IMG/VR virus record: IMGVR_UViG_3300018080_008436
Span: 1-64,000 of that record
DNA length: 64,000 bases
Direction: 5' to 3' (one strand)
The position numbers and the translations under genes are program-made. This document shows, one piece after another, positions 1,382 to 27,273 of this stretch (its first letter is position 1; each line of letters opens with the position of its first letter). Below the pieces are notes generated by a model. That model searched no databases and had not been told where the DNA came from. It saw only the letters and a list, made by a program, of their open reading frames with translations.

Positions 1382-1465
1382 ACTAAATCTCCAGTTATAT
1401 AACCATAAGAATATTATACAAAAGCTCTAGGGAACCAATATTTTAGGGAACCCATATACACCTCT

Positions 1466-1510
1466 TTAGTAATTTTTACTAATTTAATATACTTTAGTAA
1501 TTTTTACTAA
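1466..1510. promoter_or_regulatory. paired 17-bp palindrome TTAGTAA-N3-TTACTAA (operator-like)
   Basis: 1466-1482 and 1494-1510, 28-bp period. Confidence 0.6.
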
Positions 1511-1944
1511 TTTAACCCCTTACATGTATACTATTGAGCGTTGCGATTTCACAAGCGAAAATCTTGTGTGGTGTGAAAAAATTTAGGGAACCCTTATTTT
1601 CCTGTGTGAAAAAATTTAGGGAACCCTTATCACCCTGATAGGGTTCAAGGTGGAACCCTTATCGAAGACAAAGAGCTTCACTTTGCCTCAAGGACAAAGA
1701 GCTTCGCAATCTAGTTTTAGGGCACCCCCTACACCTGAAAAAGGTCAAATATTCGGAGGGGGGTGGGGGTACGTTTTCCCATATATAGAACATGCGTTTT
1801 TATATAAAAAATAAAAACAGTAGTACTCTTTTCATAATGCCTGCCGCTGTCCACCTGATTCTGGCAAAAGAAAAACCCCGCCTATCTCTAAGCGGGGTCA
1901 AGTTATTATTAAGTTTGGGATATAGAATCAGGTTAGTTCATACT

Positions 1945-4148: not shown

Positions 4149-4359
4149 TGTCTTATCTCCTTTGTCTACTTCTAACATAGCTCAAGATAGTGAAAAGTCA
4201 AACCGGTCTCCCGAGTTTTTTCATCTTTCAAAAAGAGTACTACTGTTTCACTTCAGCAGTACTCTTTTCAGAAGGAGGAGAGGGGGAGGGGGGGCAATAA
4301 AAAACCCCCTGCTCAGAAGAACAGGGGGCGGGCTTGGGGGACGCTTGGCGCGTCTTGGG

Positions 4360-5382: not shown

Positions 5383-5838
5383 GTTTCTGCTCCCTTGATT
5401 TGTTAGACTGTACTGATAAGATAGCATCTCTGCCTGGGATGTCAAGTCAGATTTCCAAGTAAAATTTTTTGTACTAGCATAAGAAATCTTATGGCTTCGA
5501 GCTACCCCCGCATCCCTTTCAAAAACAGTACTCCTGATTTGATTGAGCAGTACTCTTTTTGTAAGCCAGGTTCAGGCGGAAGGCGATCTGCGGGACAGAA
5601 AAAAGCAAAAAAATCGGAAATCCCTGTCACAGCCGTTCTGGGGCTATTTCTAAAAAGAGTACTACTGTTTCACTTCAGCAGTAGTCTTTTTGTAATCCAG
5701 GTGCTGGAAGGCGAGGGCTTCGGTCAAAGTCATCTGGGAACAAAAAAAGCCCTCGACCAAACGGGGCCGAGGGCTTGACGACGAGGGGAGAATAACCTCG
5801 TCAGCAGAACGGAAGTAGAGAAGAAATGAACAAAGACC

Positions 5839-6120
5839 CTACTTCCGTTTGGAGTCAGCTTTAGGAGGCTTCTGGGGCAACGGAAGCCGAACGGAACATG
5901 CAAGAGCATTAAATGCTTCTCGCGCCGTAAGAGGCTTCATAGGGGTTACAGGAGCGTTGACATAATTTGTTGTTGCTCGTTGATAGAGATTAGTATGCAT
6001 GAGAAGGGGTTCGTTGACATGGTCTTGCCAGTTTGTCATTTCTTGGATCTCCTTGGTTACTGGTCCTACTATGACATAGGTTTGGAAGATGTCAAATCGA
6101 TCTGGGAGATTTTTCTTCAT
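5839..6120 (-). CDS. hypothetical protein (no clear SD; abuts 38-bp site)
   Basis: ORF followed by terminator. Confidence 0.35.
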   Translation of the reverse strand: MKKNLPDRFDIFQTYVIVGPVTKEIQEMTNWQDHVNEPLLMHTNLYQRATTNYVNAPVTPMKPLTAREAFNALACSVRLPLPQKPPKADSKRK

Positions 6121-6496
6121 TTAAAAAGAGTACTCCTAATTTTATTCAGCAGTACTCTTTTTGAAAGCCAGATGCGGGGAAGCCAGATCCGCCAGATTCA
6201 GATGAGGCTGATCTTTCTGTCATGCGCATACATCATTCAGTGGGTAGAGGCGATCCAGGATCGAGTAAGTGTTTTCAAAAAGAGTACTTCTGTTTTAATT
6301 GAGTAGTACTCTTATTGTACGAACTCGCTATCCAGATAGGCTGACCTTCATAAGATTTCTTATATAAATACAAAAATATTTGTCTTTTGCTGTCACGCCT
6401 TCCAGCGGCTCATTTCTAAAAAGAATACTACTGTTTTGATTCAGCAGTACTCTTTTTGGAATCCAGGTGGCACTCGAAGGCTTCGCGGGAACACTA

Positions 6497-6660
6497 AAAA
6501 ACCCCCGATGGGAGGTCGGGGGTTTGTGAGCGGGAGGGTGGACCGCTCTTAGGGCCGAGACGGGTGAGGGTAATCAAGGGGTGGGGAAGCCCGTCTCTAG
6601 GGTTGTCGCATTGCGCGACTGTTGAATTATGTTACCAGTTCATTGCTTGCTCCTTTGTTA
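6497..6660 (-). ncRNA. candidate small RNA / minigene (Met-Asn-Trp-stop) transcription unit
   Basis: Promoter 6666-6693, SD AAGGAG, ATGAACTGGTAA at 6643-6632, three hairpins, terminator. Confidence 0.5.
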
Positions 6661-6712
6661 CTATCAACATAGCATGTTTAGTTTGATTGTCAAATCGTTC
6701 TAGGAAATTTTC

Positions 6713-7438
6713 TTATGCGCATGATAAGTCAAGCTGATATTCCTCGGGTACGTCATCATCACATTCAGTGGGTAGCTGATCCTCAAACCATTTACCAAAC
6801 TTATCAACATGACAGAGCTTGTTTTTGTTCTGGCTTTTGTAGCTCCAGTTACAACCGTTGATGATGTAACCATTACAGTTGAGGTACATTTCTCCTTCGC
6901 TAATACCCCAGTCGTCCAATTCGATTTCTGGGATACAAACCTTTCGGTCTCCCCCATAACCATGTTCTTCTGCAAGACCTTCAATAATGGGTTCGTAGTA
7001 ATATGATTCATGGCTATGCTTCCGACTAAAGAACGTCAAGCCGTCAAGGAGTTCTGTGTCATACATTCCCTCTCCTGCATGAAACTGATCGTTGGATACA
7101 TTGACAGAGCATGAGTCTTTTTCGATACAGTAGTTATACCATTGGAGGCAAGCCACTACGAATTCCTCTGTGATTTTCGCGCCGTTGGTTGCGATGTAGA
7201 AAGAGCCTACATCGACATTATTCTGCCGACAACGAATCAAGGTTTCTTTAATGGCCTTGACATTCAAAGAGGGTTCGCCCCCAGTAAATGTGATTGTACC
7301 GATTGAGGAAACTTGATCGATCAAACTATGGATGTGTTTGATATCGATGGTTTTGTTTTGGGCTTTACCCCGAAGACAGTGGGAACATTGGAACTGACAG
7401 CGTCGGGTAACTTCGATCATCAAATCTCTAACATACAT
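6713..7438 (-). CDS. radical SAM protein
   Basis: CQFQCSHC (CxxxCxxC), TGGEP, ATNG. Confidence 0.9.
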   Translation of the reverse strand: MYVRDLMIEVTRRCQFQCSHCLRGKAQNKTIDIKHIHSLIDQVSSIGTITFTGGEPSLNVKAIKETLIRCRQNNVDVGSFYIATNGAKITEEFVVACLQWYNYCIEKDSCSVNVSNDQFHAGEGMYDTELLDGLTFFSRKHSHESYYYEPIIEGLAEEHGYGGDRKVCIPEIELDDWGISEGEMYLNCNGYIINGCNWSYKSQNKNKLCHVDKFGKWFEDQLPTECDDDVPEEYQLDLSCA

Positions 7439-7675
7439 TGTAGTATCTCCCTTTTTGATTACTTCAACATAGCACAGGTTTTGATGTTGTCAAGTTGAGT
7501 TCTTAGATTTTCTTCACATATGCAGGCGCATTCAGTGGGTAGGTGATGTGCATTCAGTGGGTAGTTCTAGAAAGAGTACTACTAATTTGATTGAGTAGTA
7601 GTCTTTTTGGAAGAGCCTCCAGACACCACAAAAAAAGCCCTCATCCGAAGACGAGGGCGTTAGAGGATTGGTTGT

Positions 7676-8946: not shown

Positions 8947-9599
8947 TGTCTTTCTTCCTCTTGTTACTATCAACATAGCATAGATATGGTTGATGTCAAT
9001 CCTATTTAGAAAAAATAAATGAGATCGAGGAGGGTCTCCAGGATCGAGGAGGTATTTCTAAAAAGAGTACTACTGTTTTAATTCTGTAGTACTCTTTTTG
9101 AAAATCCTGGTGTGTATAATCACACTTCTTCACACCTCAAAATCAGGCTTATTATAATAGAATATAATATTATAATACAGAGAGATGAGCTTGATCTTAT
9201 ATAAAAAATAGAAAGAGAGTATATAGAAAGGTATCAAAACAATGGTATCAACACATTAGACACGTAAAGATACACGTGAAGATACACGTGGGCTATTATA
9301 CCAGCACGGGGTTTTCTAAAAAGAGTACTTCTGTTTTGATTGAGTAGTACTCTTTTTGAAAGGTCTGCTGGAACTCGAAGGCGCTTGGCGGGAATGAGAA
9401 ATAAAAAAGCCCTCTCGCAGATTGAGAGGGCTTTGCGCAGAGGAGGGAGGGGCCTCTGCATTGTGGAAAATTGAGGGCCTAAGGTCGGGCCTCAGGAGGG
9501 AGAGCGACCTCCCTAACTTTTCTTGCTAGTCGCTATTGCAATTCAGTCACCTCATTGATTGTTAAATACCTGCGTCCAGCTTCCCTCGGATCAGGAATT

Positions 9600-11678: not shown

Positions 11679-11901
11679 GCTACCACTATAACTTATCTAA
11701 ATAAGATGTCAAGTCGATTTACAAAAAATAAATGCGCATACTATGCGCAGGCATTCAGTGCGTAGCCTGGGTGCATTCAGTGGGTAGTTCTAGAAAGAGT
11801 ACTTCTGTTTTGATTGAGTAGTACTCTTATTGAAAGGAGAGAAGGCACTAAAAAACCCCAGCCATCTCTGACTGGGGTTGATCCTCACACGGTAGAGTGG
11901 T

Positions 11902-13683: not shown

Positions 13684-13831
13684 TGGAGGCCCCTTCAGGA
13701 GTTCAACCTGAATCTTCTCATCTGGATCGCAATGCATGCCCTTTACGACGAGCCATTTGCAACTAACTACTTACCCTGCTGTGTCCAACAACGTAACCGT
13801 CCGAGATGCTTTATCATTAAGCTAAGGGGCT
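13684..13831 (-). ncRNA. tRNA-like RNA with ~70-nt insert in place of anticodon loop
   Basis: Acceptor GCCCCT/AGGGGC, D arm GCTT/AAGC, T arm TCAGG-TTGAACT-CCTGA, 3' CCA; first gene after promoter 13871-13898. Confidence 0.65.
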
Positions 13832-14101
13832 ATCAAATCTCCTGTTTGTTCCTGTTTCAGTTTATAAGTCACAATAGCATCTCTATTGGGGATGTCAAGC
13901 GCATTTAGAAAAAATAAATCCAGCTTGATGAACCTGGCTTCCCTGGGCCTGAACTAGTGTTTCAAAAAGAGTACTCCTGTTTTTATTCAGGAGTACTCTT
14001 TTTAGAAGATGGTCCAGAGGTCCCAGGTCCTGGCTTTCTGGGCACTAAAAAACCCCCCGCCTCGAAAGGCAGGGGGCTTGACTGGGATCTCCTATCGGAG
14101 A

Positions 14102-15025
14102 CTAGTTGGTCTCGGTTTCAGCCTCGACCTGGGTCTGGGGTTCGGGAGTCGCAGGTTCGGTCTCAGGGGCAACAGTCTTGGCGATCTGCGCCTGAGCCTT
14201 GGCCTGAGCCTTGGACTTGGCAGTCTTCTTGGCAGGAGCCTTCTTCTTGGCAGGAGCCTTCTTCTTGGCAGGCGCTTTCTTCTTGGCAGGCGCTTTCTTA
14301 GCCGTTGTCTCGGCCTTGGGCTTCGACTCGGACTTGGACTTGGCTTCCTGCGCCTTCAAGCGTTCCTGGCGCTTCTCTTCGCGTTCCTTGGCCTTCTGAG
14401 CCTTTTCCGCTTCCTTCTTGGCCTTCGCCTCTTCTCGCGCTTTCTTGCGCTCGGCAACGCCCTTCTGGCGTTCGGCTTCTGCCTCGGCGCGTTCCTTCTT
14501 CTTGGCTTCGCGTTCCTCGGCGCGTTTCTGCTTGTCGGCTTCAGCCTTCGCCTTGGCCTCTTCCTTGGCTTTCGCCTCCTGGGCCTTCTTGGCTTCCATC
14601 TTCTTGATCTGGGCAGGCGTTTTGCCGATATGGTCGCGATTCAGCTTGGGCAACGGTTCCTTGCGGAAGCGCAGGCGATAATGCTGTTCCTCCTTGACCT
14701 TTTCGCCATCGGCGTTCTTGACCATTTTGCGAGTACAACGTTCCATGTAGTACAGATGACCCTTTGCGGAGTAGTTACCCCGATTGGTCTCGGTCGGCCC
14801 CATGAGAACGTTGACGGTTGCCAGAGTCGCTTTGTCCTCGGTCCCCTCCTTGATGACATCCGCTTTGAAGGTCATGTTCTTACGAGCGAAGTCGATGACC
14901 TGTTGCTTGGTAAAGCGTTTGGCATTGGAGTTGTACCCGAAGGTCTCCATGATATGGGCCATGATCAGGTTGTAGTTTGAACCTTGGCGCGGATAGGGAT
15001 TCTGGATTTTCTGGAACTTGGGCAT
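14102..15025 (-). CDS. protein with histone H1-like Lys/Ala-rich C-terminus
   Basis: (K)KKAPA x4, KAEA-rich coil; GC-rich codons; SD AAGGAG. Confidence 0.8.
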   Translation of the reverse strand: MPKFQKIQNPYPRQGSNYNLIMAHIMETFGYNSNAKRFTKQQVIDFARKNMTFKADVIKEGTEDKATLATVNVLMGPTETNRGNYSAKGHLYYMERCTRKMVKNADGEKVKEEQHYRLRFRKEPLPKLNRDHIGKTPAQIKKMEAKKAQEAKAKEEAKAKAEADKQKRAEEREAKKKERAEAEAERQKGVAERKKAREEAKAKKEAEKAQKAKEREEKRQERLKAQEAKSKSESKPKAETTAKKAPAKKKAPAKKKAPAKKKAPAKKTAKSKAQAKAQAQIAKTVAPETEPATPEPQTQVEAETETN

Positions 15026-16191: not shown

Positions 16192-16511
16192 GATCCTCTC
16201 CTTTTGTTCTTTATATACCATAACATCATATGTATGTATTTCAAGTTGACTTAGTAAAATAACTTCCCAGGTGTCTGCCTTCCTGGAAGCATTTCTGAAA
16301 AGAGTACTTCTGTTTTTATTCAGTAGTACTCTTTTTAGAAGTAGCTGGCACCGGCGGCTGGTCCGCCAGGGCTATGAACTCATTGGGGAAAAAAGGAAAG
16401 CCCCTACCCAATTAAGGATAGAGGCTTTAACGACCCTGCCAAGGTTGAGATCGCAGGGGCCTGCGTAGGCAGGCATTCAAGGACGCGCATTCAGTGGATG
16501 CGCTCAGGCAT

Positions 16512-16745
16512 TCAGTGCATGCATTCCGTGGATGGTTCTACCCATCTTGCAACTGAATCGCAATGACAACAACTATGATACTTGCCAGCGATGTTCTTGG
16601 AGCTATCAATAGCATCTCCATGTTCATCAACTGTCAACTCGACTGTAAACATTGGGTTGGACCCATTGTTGGAATCGCATTCGTCATTGGTACATTGCAG
16701 TTGCAATTCTGGTTTGAATTTCTCAGCCATGAGTTTCTCAGCCAT
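16512..16745 (-). CDS. hypothetical protein
   Basis: Cys pairs. Confidence 0.55.
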   Translation of the reverse strand: MAEKLMAEKFKPELQLQCTNDECDSNNGSNPMFTVELTVDEHGDAIDSSKNIAGKYHSCCHCDSVARWVEPSTECMH

Positions 16746-26838: not shown

Positions 26839-27273
26839 ATATGCCCCCAGGCATTCAGTGCATAGTTTGCATAGCCTGCACCAATTCAGGTTAAGAATGT
26901 GCTTGCATTCGCAGACCCATTCAGTGGATGGTTACATCGTAGCTACTCTCTTATGACAATGTGGACATTTGACAATTCGAGTCTTTCGATGGTAGGCTTC
27001 CTCTGCCGCTCGTTTCAGGTTATAACGTTTCCGACAATGACGACACGTAAAATATGTGTTAAGGTCAATTGGTCTTGGCATTTTTGTTCTTTCATTGAAT
27101 GTTCCTGTCTCTCCCTTTATTATATCGCATAATTGAAGGATGTCAATCCCCTAAGGAATCTCAATCCTCCTGGAGTATGTCGCGATTATTATACTTCTTG
27201 CGGCCTGCCTTCTGAGCCTTGAACTTCCGACGCTTGTCACGAGTGTAAGGGTCCTGCTTCTTGCGATGTCTTT

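What the first reader, a model, noticed from the sequence alone, without database searches (positions are those of the whole stretch)
6497..6693. Cassette whose only cargo is a 3-codon minigene plus hairpins
Seen: consensus promoter, SD AAGGAG, ATG-AAC-TGG-TAA (6643-6632), then hairpins GTCGC/GCGAC, GAGACGGG/CCCGTCTC and GAGCGG/CCGCTC, then a terminator: a ~165-nt unit. Known: lambda bar minigenes sequester tRNA by peptidyl-tRNA drop-off. Inference: an sRNA or tRNA-Trp-sequestering minigene; a decayed gene is the alternative.
Basis: partly seen in the sequence, partly recalled or inferred. Interest (0 to 1): 0.6.

Follow-up and report, generated by a model that had tools for sequence, protein, structure and literature searches.

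The report
Gene-less early cassette in giant phage
A strong early promoter in a ~0.5-Mb environmental phage drives only a 3-codon gene stump, three C-rich RNA hairpins and a terminator; it looks like the leftover of cassette shuffling, and no available data can test whether the short RNA has a job of its own.

Summary
The window is the start of a 476-kb virus record. Its first 30 kb is an array of small early-gene cassettes, each bounded by a repeated promoter and a repeated 34-nt palindrome.

The unit is built from these standard parts:
- **5' end:** its promoter, ribosome-binding site and first codons resemble the next cassette downstream, whose ORF starts MTNWQ. The minigene's TAA aligns with that gene's CAA.
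- **3' end:** its terminator, linker and palindrome match other cassettes' ends.
- **Unique part:** about 95 nt of C-rich, strongly folded RNA (z = -4.3).

The upstream radical-SAM gene has no terminator of its own, so its mRNA must also end here.

My best reading is a cassette that lost its ORF through PeSL-like modular shuffling, with the minigene as a stump. It is probably still transcribed as a ~164-nt RNA.

A genuine small RNA with C-rich loops, like sX13, remains possible (about 0.2). A bar-like tRNA-Trp trap is unlikely (about 0.05).

No diverged relatives and no RNA-seq runs were found, so neither conservation nor expression could be tested.

The parts
6666..6693 (-). Early sigma-70-type promoter: TTGACA, 16-nt spacer with TGn, then TATGTT. 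It belongs to a phage promoter family.
   Evidence: The upstream and -35 part is 88% identical over 24 nt to the promoter at 6095 (family D8). The -10 part is identical over 20 nt to the promoter at 8999.
6650..6655 (-). Shine-Dalgarno sequence AAGGAG, 6 nt upstream of the ATG.
   Evidence: Sequence. The predicted fold pairs it with GCCCU at 6556-6552, with P(unpaired) about 0.
6632..6643 (-). Three-codon ORF ATG AAC TGG TAA. It is interpreted as the stump of a duplicated gene start.
   Evidence: In an anchored alignment to the ORF start at 6039, 15 of 21 bases match. That pair scores 10, against a maximum of 7 for 1899 other ORF starts. TAA aligns with CAA.
6605..6619 (-). Hairpin H1: 5-bp stem, GCAAU loop.
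6557..6597 (-). Hairpin H2: 8-bp stem and a 25-nt C-rich loop (CUUCCCCACCCCUUGAUUACCCUCA).
   Evidence: The C-runs in the loop have P(unpaired) of at least 0.99.
6528..6548 (-). Hairpin H3: 6-bp stem and a 9-nt loop UCCACCCUC. It lies just before the terminator, and the same arrangement occurs in two other cassettes.
   Evidence: Analogous pre-terminator hairpins occur at about 9468-9446 and 5822-5800.
6496..6525 (-). Intrinsic terminator: 10-bp stem, loop CCUCCCA, six U.
   Evidence: It aligns with the terminators of other cassettes.
6421..6495 (-). Standard cassette end: the linker (GTTCCC..GAAGCC.TCG..CACCTGGATT) followed by the 34-nt palindrome AAGAATACT..AGTACTCTT.
   Evidence: Alignment A4. 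The palindrome has 19 copies, all within the first 30.5 kb.
6713..7438 (-). Upstream radical-SAM gene (241 aa). It has no terminator of its own, and its last ~17 codons run into the module that precedes the promoter.
   Evidence: Only 20 nt separate its stop codon from the -35 box.
5839..6095 (-). Next cassette downstream: promoter at 6095-6068 and a 66-aa ORFan at 6039-5839 (MTNWQDH...). Its 5' module is the closest match to that of the unit.
   Evidence: (D8). The ORF has no homologues.

Best explanation
This is an early-gene cassette that has lost its gene.

The first ~30 kb of this ~0.5-Mb phage is a hyperplastic array of small ORFan cassettes. Each cassette is framed by repeated regulatory modules: a 34-nt palindrome, an upstream motif, a sigma-70-type promoter with an SD, and at the far end a GC-rich terminator and a linker. 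This is functionally like the PeSL cassettes of T4-type phages, where recombination between the repeats inserts, swaps and deletes cargo (inferred).

In this unit a copy of the neighbouring cassette's 5' module (promoter, SD and first few codons) sits almost directly on a standard 3' module. Only a 3-codon stump, MNW-stop, and about 95 nt of C-rich hairpins lie between them.

How it probably works now (inferred, not shown):
- Host RNA polymerase fires the promoter early in infection and makes a ~164-nt stable, highly structured RNA.
- The same hairpins and terminator also end and protect the read-through mRNA of the upstream radical-SAM gene, which has no terminator of its own.
- The minigene is a by-product. 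It is not the reason the unit exists.
For: 1. The promoter belongs to a family of about 20 promoters confined to the early region.
2. The 5' module matches the next cassette:
   - 88% identity upstream of the -35 box (D8);
   - the same AGTAAC.AAGGAG;
   - AACTGG TAA CAT AAT-TCAAC against AACTGG CAA GAC CATGTCAAC, a score of 10 against a maximum of 7 for 1899 other ORF starts.
3. The terminator, linker and palindrome align with the 3' ends of seven other cassettes. The palindrome has 19 copies, all in the first 30.5 kb.
4. The next 350 nt downstream hold three palindromes and a promoter-upstream module with no promoter or ORF. These look like further cassette debris.
5. The radical-SAM gene carries a ~17-aa C-terminal extension absent from 8 homologues, and only 20 nt separate its stop from the -35 box.
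6. Multi-hairpin GC-rich 3' UTRs ahead of terminators occur in other cassettes.
7. Neither the read-through frame nor any other frame has protein relatives.
8. PeSLs are described as repeats comprising a promoter, stem-loop, SD and start codon that mediate indels among ORFans (PMC2839356; PMC4122927).
Against: - The match to the neighbouring gene start is short, and a free local-alignment shuffle test does not support it (721 of 5000 shuffles score as high). Only the anchored test supports it.
- After 6621 there is no similarity to that gene, so the deleted body cannot be identified.
- A 65%-GC, strongly folded stretch (z = -4.3) in a 39%-GC genome suggests the structure is maintained by selection. 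That fits a functional RNA as well as it fits a 3'-end module.
- No second genome was available to show the deletion event.
- Transcription has not been observed.
Confidence: 0.5

Rival explanations
1. It is a genuine phage-encoded small regulatory RNA of the C-rich-loop kind. The ~164-nt early transcript would expose CCCC, CCCUCC and CCUCCC motifs in three apical loops. These would pair with G-rich Shine-Dalgarno regions (GGGAG/GGAGG) of host or phage mRNAs and block their translation, as sX13, RsaE and RNAIII do. The stump ORF would be irrelevant or would help the 5' end.
For: - It is an independent promoter-to-terminator unit.
- It folds strongly, with z = -3.9 for the unit and -4.3 for the hairpins.
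- The loop C-runs are predicted unpaired, P about 1.0.
- The best full-length Rfam alignment is to sX13, with its loops 2 and 3 aligned to H3 and the terminator loop.
- Many early genes of this phage have GGGAG-type SDs.
- 22 of 33 CCUCC/CUCCC motifs on the sense strand of the early region are intergenic and clustered at three cassette ends.
- sX13 biology is described in PMC3771888.
Against: - The sX13 score is 14.8 bits against a gathering score of 50, with E = 0.85-3.6.
- There is no paralogue in the genome.
- There is no relative anywhere, so no covariation can be measured.
- A duplex scan against 778 start regions showed no enrichment over internal controls, mean -20.1 against -19.5 kcal/mol.
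- Once the standard modules are removed, only H1 and H2 are unique to this unit.
- H3-type hairpins sit in the ordinary 3' UTRs of other cassettes.
Confidence: 0.2
2. The hairpins and terminator are simply the 3' UTR of the radical-SAM mRNA, serving as exonuclease protection, terminator and insulator. A copy of a promoter module then recombined in between the gene's stop codon and that UTR.
For: - The radical-SAM gene has no other terminator, and its C-terminus reads into the promoter-upstream module.
- The motif CTACCCACTGAATG at its 3' end recurs in the intergenic promoter-upstream modules at 6249-6262, about 7529-7569 and about 11790 (D6, 32, 51). This gives a plausible recombination site.
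- Similar GC-rich multi-hairpin UTRs follow other ORFs.
Against: - This overlaps heavily with the best explanation and differs only in the order of events.
- It cannot be told apart from it without a relative.
- Radical-SAM homologues in other phages (L008, L027) have unrelated downstream sequence.
Confidence: 0.2
3. It is a functional bar-like minigene. Strong transcription and the good SD would drive repeated translation of fMet-Asn-Trp. Peptidyl-tRNA-Trp would drop off and tie up the host's tRNA-Trp, slowing host translation early in infection.
For: - The SD lies at 6 nt, followed by ATG, two sense codons and TAA, behind a strong family promoter.
- Shorter minigenes give more drop-off and more toxicity (PMC2490762).
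Against: - The ORF looks like a stump of the neighbouring gene's start.
- The SD is predicted to be paired.
- In E. coli, minigene toxicity is seen in pth-defective cells, not in wild-type cells.
- There is no second minigene behind any other family promoter.
- No conservation data exist.
Confidence: 0.05
4. It is a Trp-sensing transcription attenuator: a leader peptide with a Trp codon in front of a terminator.
For: A short ORF ending in UGG lies 107 nt upstream of an intrinsic terminator.
Against: - There is only one Trp codon.
- No alternative anti-terminator pairing is predicted. The terminator stem has P(unpaired) about 0.
- Downstream lie three terminator-like palindromes and a separate promoter, not a regulated gene.
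Confidence: 0.02

Closest known systems
PeSL (promoter-early stem-loop) regulatory cassettes of T4-type phages (Arbiol et al. 2010, PMC2839356; Comeau et al. 2014, PMC4122927)
   Same: Both are repeated composite motifs combining a sigma-70-like early promoter, an AT-rich upstream region, a terminator-like stem-loop and the SD and start of the next gene. Both are concentrated in an ORFan-rich region, and both show signs of recombination between copies (mosaic modules, empty cassettes).
   Different: - This phage is not T4-like. Its terminase's best match among named phages is 25% identity, to Microcystis phage Ma-LMM01-type phages.
- The stem-loop is a separate 34-nt A5-stem-T5 palindrome lying 60-130 nt upstream of the promoter. 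It does not overlap the promoter.
- Each cassette also has its own GC-rich terminator and linker.
- Indels between sister genomes could not be shown.
sX13 and other small RNAs with C-rich apical loops (RF02232; PMC3771888; also RsaE/RNAIII UCCC loops and the cuckoo RNA family, PMC4615179)
   Same: About 110-160 nt long, with three stem-loops whose apical loops carry runs of C. The last stem-loop is the terminator. The loops are complementary to G-rich ribosome-binding sites.
   Different: - It scores 14.8 bits against a gathering score of 50, so it is not a member.
- It is phage-borne.
- It has a 25-nt loop in H2 and a 5' SD with a 3-codon ORF.
- No target has been identified and expression has not been shown.
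Lambda bar minigenes (AUG AUA UAA/UGA; cited in PMC2490762, reference 20)
   Same: A phage-borne ORF of very few codons behind a Shine-Dalgarno sequence, on a transcribed non-coding stretch.
   Different: - The codons differ (Asn-Trp rather than Ile), and there is no sequence homology.
- It appears to be a stump of a duplicated gene start.
- Its function is untested.

Membership tests
PeSL-type mobile regulatory cassettes | A repeated composite motif with a sigma-70-like early promoter, an AT-rich upstream region, and the SD and start of the downstream gene | tested here: met
   About 20 promoters of the form TTGAC(A/T)..TGCTATGTT with an SD and ATG downstream. AT-rich ATTTTTTCTAAAT-type upstream regions are present.
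PeSL-type mobile regulatory cassettes | A stem-loop or terminator that forms part of the repeated motif | tested here: met
   The 34-nt palindrome occurs 19 times, all in the first 30.5 kb. Its position differs from PeSLs: it is separate and upstream of the promoter, not overlapping it.
PeSL-type mobile regulatory cassettes | Concentration in hyperplastic, ORFan-rich regions | tested here: met
   Eight of 9 neighbouring ORFs have no confident Pfam or PHROG match. The 77-aa ORF has only weak PHROG hits of unknown function, E about 0.002. The 66-aa neighbour has no homologue among 5.8 billion proteins.
PeSL-type mobile regulatory cassettes | Indels or replacements between closely related genomes that are bounded by the motifs | not testable with these tools
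   Every other copy of this phage found is 99.98-100% identical. No diverged relative carries the palindrome.
PeSL-type mobile regulatory cassettes | Occurrence in T4-like myoviruses | tested here: not met
   The best terminase hits among named phages have 25% identity, to Ma-LMM01-type phages. This is therefore an analogue, not a member.
Rfam sX13 (RF02232) | A covariance-model score at or above the gathering score (50 bits) | tested here: not met
   14.8 bits, E = 0.85-3.6.
Rfam sX13 (RF02232) | Three stem-loops with apical 4C/5C motifs | tested here: met
   Predicted only. CCCC occurs twice in the H2 loop, CCC in the H3 loop and CCUCCC in the terminator loop, all with P(unpaired) of at least 0.99.
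bar-like toxic minigene | An SD, a start codon, a few sense codons (in the cited work, 2 to 8 codons in all) and a stop, on a transcribed RNA | tested here: met
   Transcription is only predicted, from the promoter.
bar-like toxic minigene | Peptidyl-tRNA accumulation and growth arrest in pth-defective cells, relieved by the cognate tRNA or by Pth | not testable with these tools
   This needs an experiment. The criterion comes from PMC2490762.
bar-like toxic minigene | The mini-ORF is maintained (conserved) rather than incidental | tested here: inconclusive
   No relatives exist to compare. Within the genome it aligns as a stump of the neighbouring gene's start, which argues for incidental.
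Trp-type leader-peptide attenuator | Regulatory codons in a leader ORF, alternative terminator and anti-terminator folds, and regulated genes downstream | tested here: not met
   There is one UGG. The terminator is paired with probability about 1 and no competing helix appears. Palindromes and a new promoter follow downstream.

The most novel reading that the evidence does not exclude
The ~164-nt early transcript is a true small RNA of a giant phage. Its exposed C-rich loops (CCCC, CCCUCC, CCUCCC) would mask G-rich ribosome-binding sites of host or phage mRNAs, in the manner of sX13 or RsaE. It may be one of several C-rich 3'-end elements with the same role (also at 9530-9400 and 4300-4270). 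It would have been born from a cassette that lost its gene.
Probability: 0.2. Interest if true: 0.6.

Novelty: new member of a known kind. Interest (0 to 1): 0.3.

Why it matters
If the main reading holds, the unit is a clear example of how repeat-bounded early cassettes in a non-T4 giant phage gain and lose cargo. It would extend PeSL-type modular shuffling to an unrelated ~0.5-Mb environmental phage. It would also show how an orphan promoter-terminator pair, a raw small-RNA gene, can arise as a by-product.

If the small-RNA reading holds, it would be an early regulatory RNA of a jumbo phage that acts on ribosome-binding sites. In either case it warns against reading function into minigenes that sit behind modular promoters.

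Tried and rejected
- **Rfam.** The gathering search of the whole window found only three tRNAs. Permissive scans of the region gave only sub-threshold noise; the best full-length hit was sX13 at 14.8 bits.
- **DNA searches of the phage collection.** Both near and distant modes found nothing.
- **Paralogues in the genome.** blastn-short and nhmmer found none.
- **Exact-pattern scans.**
  - A 21-mer of the RNA in IMG/VR gave no hit.
  - The palindrome pattern in IMG/VR gave no hit.
  - In JGI metagenomes the palindrome pattern found only the same phage plus chance hits with no other similarity.
  - A 20-mer in 185,579 prokaryote genomes gave one hit, a 23-nt match in a Gammaproteobacteria MAG with no flanking similarity. 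About one hit is expected by chance.
- **Synteny through the radical-SAM gene.** Homologues of 50-59% identity lie in unrelated phages with different downstream sequence.
- **Covariance model of the RNA.** It found nothing in four fragmentary records of terminase relatives or in ten other loci. This is weak, because those records are only 12-22% complete.
- **Public reads.** Three DNA runs hold identical sequence, so there is no variation to exploit. No RNA run was listed.
- **Read-through ORF** (MNW-stop-HNST...GVF). It has no PHROG match, no similarity to the neighbouring ORF and no word-sharing protein among 5.8 billion. I rejected it as a coding gene.
- **Duplex-energy target scan.** It showed no enrichment at start sites and is uninformative.
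- **Free local-alignment shuffle test of the stump homology.** Not significant, 721 of 5000. Only the anchored test supports the homology.
- **Plus-strand ORFs** of 38 and 40 aa. They have no SD or promoter context, so I did not pursue them.

No alternative genetic code was used.

Full report
**Setting**

The window is bases 1-64000 of a 476,248-bp IMG/VR virus record with 39% GC. The same sequence sits inside a 524,692-bp JGI contig and in several ENA and Logan assemblies at 99.98-100% identity. Three DNA runs from three studies, of sediment and seawater metagenomes, hold it without a single difference across 5663-7577.

The record encodes a portal protein and a large terminase. The terminase's best matches among named phages have only 25% identity, to Microcystis Ma-LMM01-type phages. 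Long ORFs read normally under table 11, so I invoked no alternative genetic code.

Read on the minus strand, the unit contains:
- the promoter TTGACA (6693-6688), a 16-nt spacer ending in TGC, and TATGTT (6671-6666);
- AAGGAG at 6655-6650;
- ATG AAC TGG TAA at 6643-6632;
- hairpin H1, GTCGC/GCGAC, at 6619-6605;
- hairpin H2, GAGACGGG/CCCGTCTC, at 6597-6557, with a 25-nt loop;
- hairpin H3, GAGCGG/CCGCTC, at 6548-6528, with a 9-nt loop;
- a 10-bp terminator at 6525-6499 followed by six U.

The fold is far more stable than composition predicts. The unit has z = -3.9 and hairpins H1-H3 alone have z = -4.3, with 0 of 200 shuffles folding as well in either case. The stretch is one of only seven islands of at least 62% GC in the genome, and it is C-rich on the transcribed sense. 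No ORF other than the three codons has a start and an SD on this strand.

**The surroundings explain most of it**

The first ~30 kb, on the minus strand, is an array of small genes. Most have no family match. The genes are separated by repeated regulatory modules:
- **Promoter family.** About 20 promoters have the form TTGAC(A/T)-N-TGCTATGTT followed by an SD. Nearly all lie in this region.
- **Palindrome.** The 34-nt AAGAGTACTnCTG...CAGnAGTACTCTT, flanked by A and T runs, occurs 19 times. All copies lie before 30.5 kb.
- **Cassette end.** Each cassette closes with a GC-rich intrinsic terminator and a linker (GTTCCC..GAAGCC.TCG..CACCTGGATT) that leads into the palindrome.
- **Upstream motif.** (C)CACTGAATG recurs between palindrome and promoter (D6, 32, 51).

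This is functionally the PeSL arrangement described for T4-type phages. There, repeats of promoter, stem-loop, SD and start codon mediate insertion, deletion and swapping of ORFans (PMC2839356; PMC4122927).

**The unit is built from those modules**

Its 3' end, comprising the terminator, linker and palindrome at 6454-6421, aligns with seven other cassette ends. Its 5' end is a mosaic:
- The -10 region and initial transcribed bases are identical over 20 nt to the promoter at 8999.
- The region upstream of and including the -35 box is 88% identical over 24 nt to the very next promoter downstream, at 6095 (D8).

The similarity to the 6095 cassette continues through AGTAAC.AAGGAG into the coding start. 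AAC TGG TAA CAT AAT-TCAAC (6640-6621) aligns with AAC TGG CAA GAC CATGTCAAC (6033-6013), which lies in an ORF starting MTNWQDH at 6039.

I compared this 20-nt stretch with the equivalent positions of every ORF start. The neighbour scores 10, and the best of 1899 other ORF starts scores 7. An unanchored shuffle test is not significant, with 721 of 5000 shuffles scoring as high. The homology is therefore probable, not proven.

If it is real, the minigene's TAA corresponds to a Gln codon, and the minigene is the stump of a duplicated gene start. Beyond 6621 nothing resembles that gene at the DNA or protein level.

**More debris lies next door**

The 350 nt after the unit contain three palindromes and no ORF. 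They also contain a promoter-upstream module, CTACCCACTGAATGATGTATGCGCAT at 6262-6237, that runs straight into a linker without any promoter.

Upstream, the radical-SAM gene (7438-6713) carries about 17 extra C-terminal residues that eight homologues lack. It stops only 20 nt before the -35 box and has no terminator or palindrome of its own. Transcripts from its promoter at 7493 must therefore run through the unit and end at 6499. This is an inference from the sequence.

**What is unique**

About 95 nt (6620-6526) remain after the shared modules are removed. Even H3 has counterparts. A 6-7-bp stem with a 9-nt pyrimidine-rich loop, placed 2-3 nt before the terminator, also occurs at about 9468-9446 (loop CCCCUCCCU) and about 5822-5800 (loop UUAUUCUCC).

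The 3' UTR at 9530-9400 is a second C-rich multi-hairpin element, with z = -3.3.

On the sense strand of the early region, 22 of 33 CCUCC or CUCCC pentamers are intergenic. They cluster at three cassette ends, near 4.28, 6.52 and 9.47 kb. Overlapping motifs inflate this count, so I treat it as descriptive only.

**Is it a small RNA?**

The predicted loops expose CCCC twice, CCC and CCUCCC, each with an unpaired probability of about 1. Rfam's best full-length alignment is to sX13, with sX13 loops 2 and 3 aligned to H3 and the terminator loop. sX13 represses mRNAs through C-rich loops that pair with G-rich motifs at start sites (PMC3771888).

Against this reading:
- The score is 14.8 bits against a gathering score of 50, so the unit is at most an analogue.
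- A crude duplex scan against 778 start regions showed no enrichment.
- The genome holds no paralogue.

Conservation could not be tested, because I found no diverged relative. The searches were:
- phage database DNA, near and distant modes;
- exact-pattern scans of IMG/VR;
- a palindrome scan of JGI metagenomes;
- a 20-mer scan of GTDB genomes, which gave one chance-level 23-nt match;
- synteny through radical-SAM homologues;
- a covariance model run on fragmentary records of terminase relatives.

No RNA run was listed.

**Is it a bar-like minigene?**

The form fits: a good SD, three codons and a strong promoter. Shorter minigenes cause more peptidyl-tRNA drop-off (PMC2490762).

Several points count against it:
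- The ORF looks like a stump.
- Its SD is predicted to pair with GCCCU at 6556-6552.
- No other family promoter is followed by a minigene.
- In E. coli the toxicity needs a Pth defect.

I put this reading at about 0.05. A Trp attenuator is less likely still, because there is one UGG, no competing fold, and no regulated gene downstream.

**Is it a broken small gene?**

The frame stays open after TAA for 48 codons, as far as the terminator's U-run. That is expected in C-rich sequence. The peptide has no PHROG match, no similarity to the neighbouring ORF, and no word-sharing protein among 5.8 billion. I reject this reading.

**Verdict**

The most likely account, at about 0.5, is an ORF-less cassette left by modular shuffling. 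It is probably still transcribed, and it serves as the 3' end of the radical-SAM mRNA. A variant with the same content but a different order of events, in which a promoter module inserted into the radical-SAM 3' UTR, takes about 0.2. A real small RNA with C-rich loops also takes about 0.2.

The finding is a new member of a known kind, and its interest is modest. The main value lies in documenting a PeSL-like cassette system in an unrelated giant phage, and a plausible birthplace for a small-RNA gene.

Noticed in passing
window 4233-30466 (19 sites; for example 6126-6159, 6280-6313, 6421-6454): A 34-nt palindrome, AAGAGTACTnCTG..CAGnAGTACTCTT, flanked by A5 and T5. It looks like a bidirectional terminator. 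It occurs 19 times, all in the first 30.5 kb, often as pairs separated by a conserved 'GGCTGTGACAG' spacer. No other virus record carries it.
   Followed up: partly
window 6234-6252, 6762-6780, 7529-7569, about 11760-11800, about 16480-16540, about 26850-26940 (minus strand): The motif (C)CACTGAATG(C) recurs between palindromes and promoters, often doubled. It looks like an operator. One copy forms the codons LPTE at the radical-SAM C-terminus.
   Followed up: partly
window 6713-6765 (minus): The radical-SAM protein has about 17 extra C-terminal residues (ECDDDVPEEYQLDLSCA) that 8 homologues lack. They are encoded by the module upstream of the next promoter. The gene has no terminator of its own.
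   Followed up: yes
window 6160-6279 (minus): A promoter-upstream module (CTACCCACTGAATGATGTATGCGCAT) joins directly to a post-terminator linker between two palindromes. It appears to be a cassette that lost its promoter, ORF and terminator.
   Followed up: partly
window 9398-9545 (minus): A second GC-rich, C-rich multi-hairpin element lies in the 3' UTR of a 75-aa ORF, with z = -3.3. It includes a GGGAG/CUCCC hairpin and a loop CCCCUCCCU just before the terminator.
   Followed up: partly
window 4270-4300 (minus): A C/U-rich tract, CCCCCCCUCCCCCUCUCCUCCUUCUG, sits directly after a terminator's U-run and before a palindrome.
   Followed up: no
window 13684-13831 (minus), downstream of the promoter at 13898: The leader looks like a tRNA split by a large (roughly 75-100 nt) insert. 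It has a 7-bp acceptor stem (GCCCCTT/AAGGGGC), a D-arm-like helix and a T-arm-like helix. ARAGORN calls it tRNA-Trp(CCA) with a 74-nt intron, but only at a relaxed score. Default ARAGORN and Rfam do not call it. The D and T loops are non-canonical.
   Followed up: partly
window 6552-6581 (+ strand): A canonical G-quadruplex motif lies on the template strand of the unit. It is one of only three in the 476-kb genome on either strand.
   Followed up: no
window 14102-15025 (minus): A 307-aa ORF whose C-terminal part (about 14130-14600) is a GC-rich, Lys/Ala/Glu-rich low-complexity stretch with repeats (KKAPAKK). It accounts for two of the seven GC islands.
   Followed up: no
window 1440-1760 (minus): Direct repeats of about 27 nt (ATAAGGGTTCCCTAAATTTTTTCACAC), further GGGTTCCCTA copies and AAAAATTACTAAAG repeats lie in a 565-nt ORF-free gap. 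They look like iterons.
   Followed up: no
whole record (G000) and loci L004, L005: IMG/VR classes the 476-kb record as a 'provirus', but it is cut from a 524,692-bp contig. Near-identical sequence also lies on a 523,871-bp ENA contig, and nearly identical sequence occurs in sediment and seawater runs from three studies. The provirus call may be an artefact.
   Followed up: no
genome about 303090-303175 (minus): A tRNA-like sequence outside the window (TAGCTCAGATGG...GGTTCAAGTCCC). A 14-nt stretch of it is complementary to the 5' arm of the unit's terminator, which is a chance-level match (E = 0.2).
   Followed up: no
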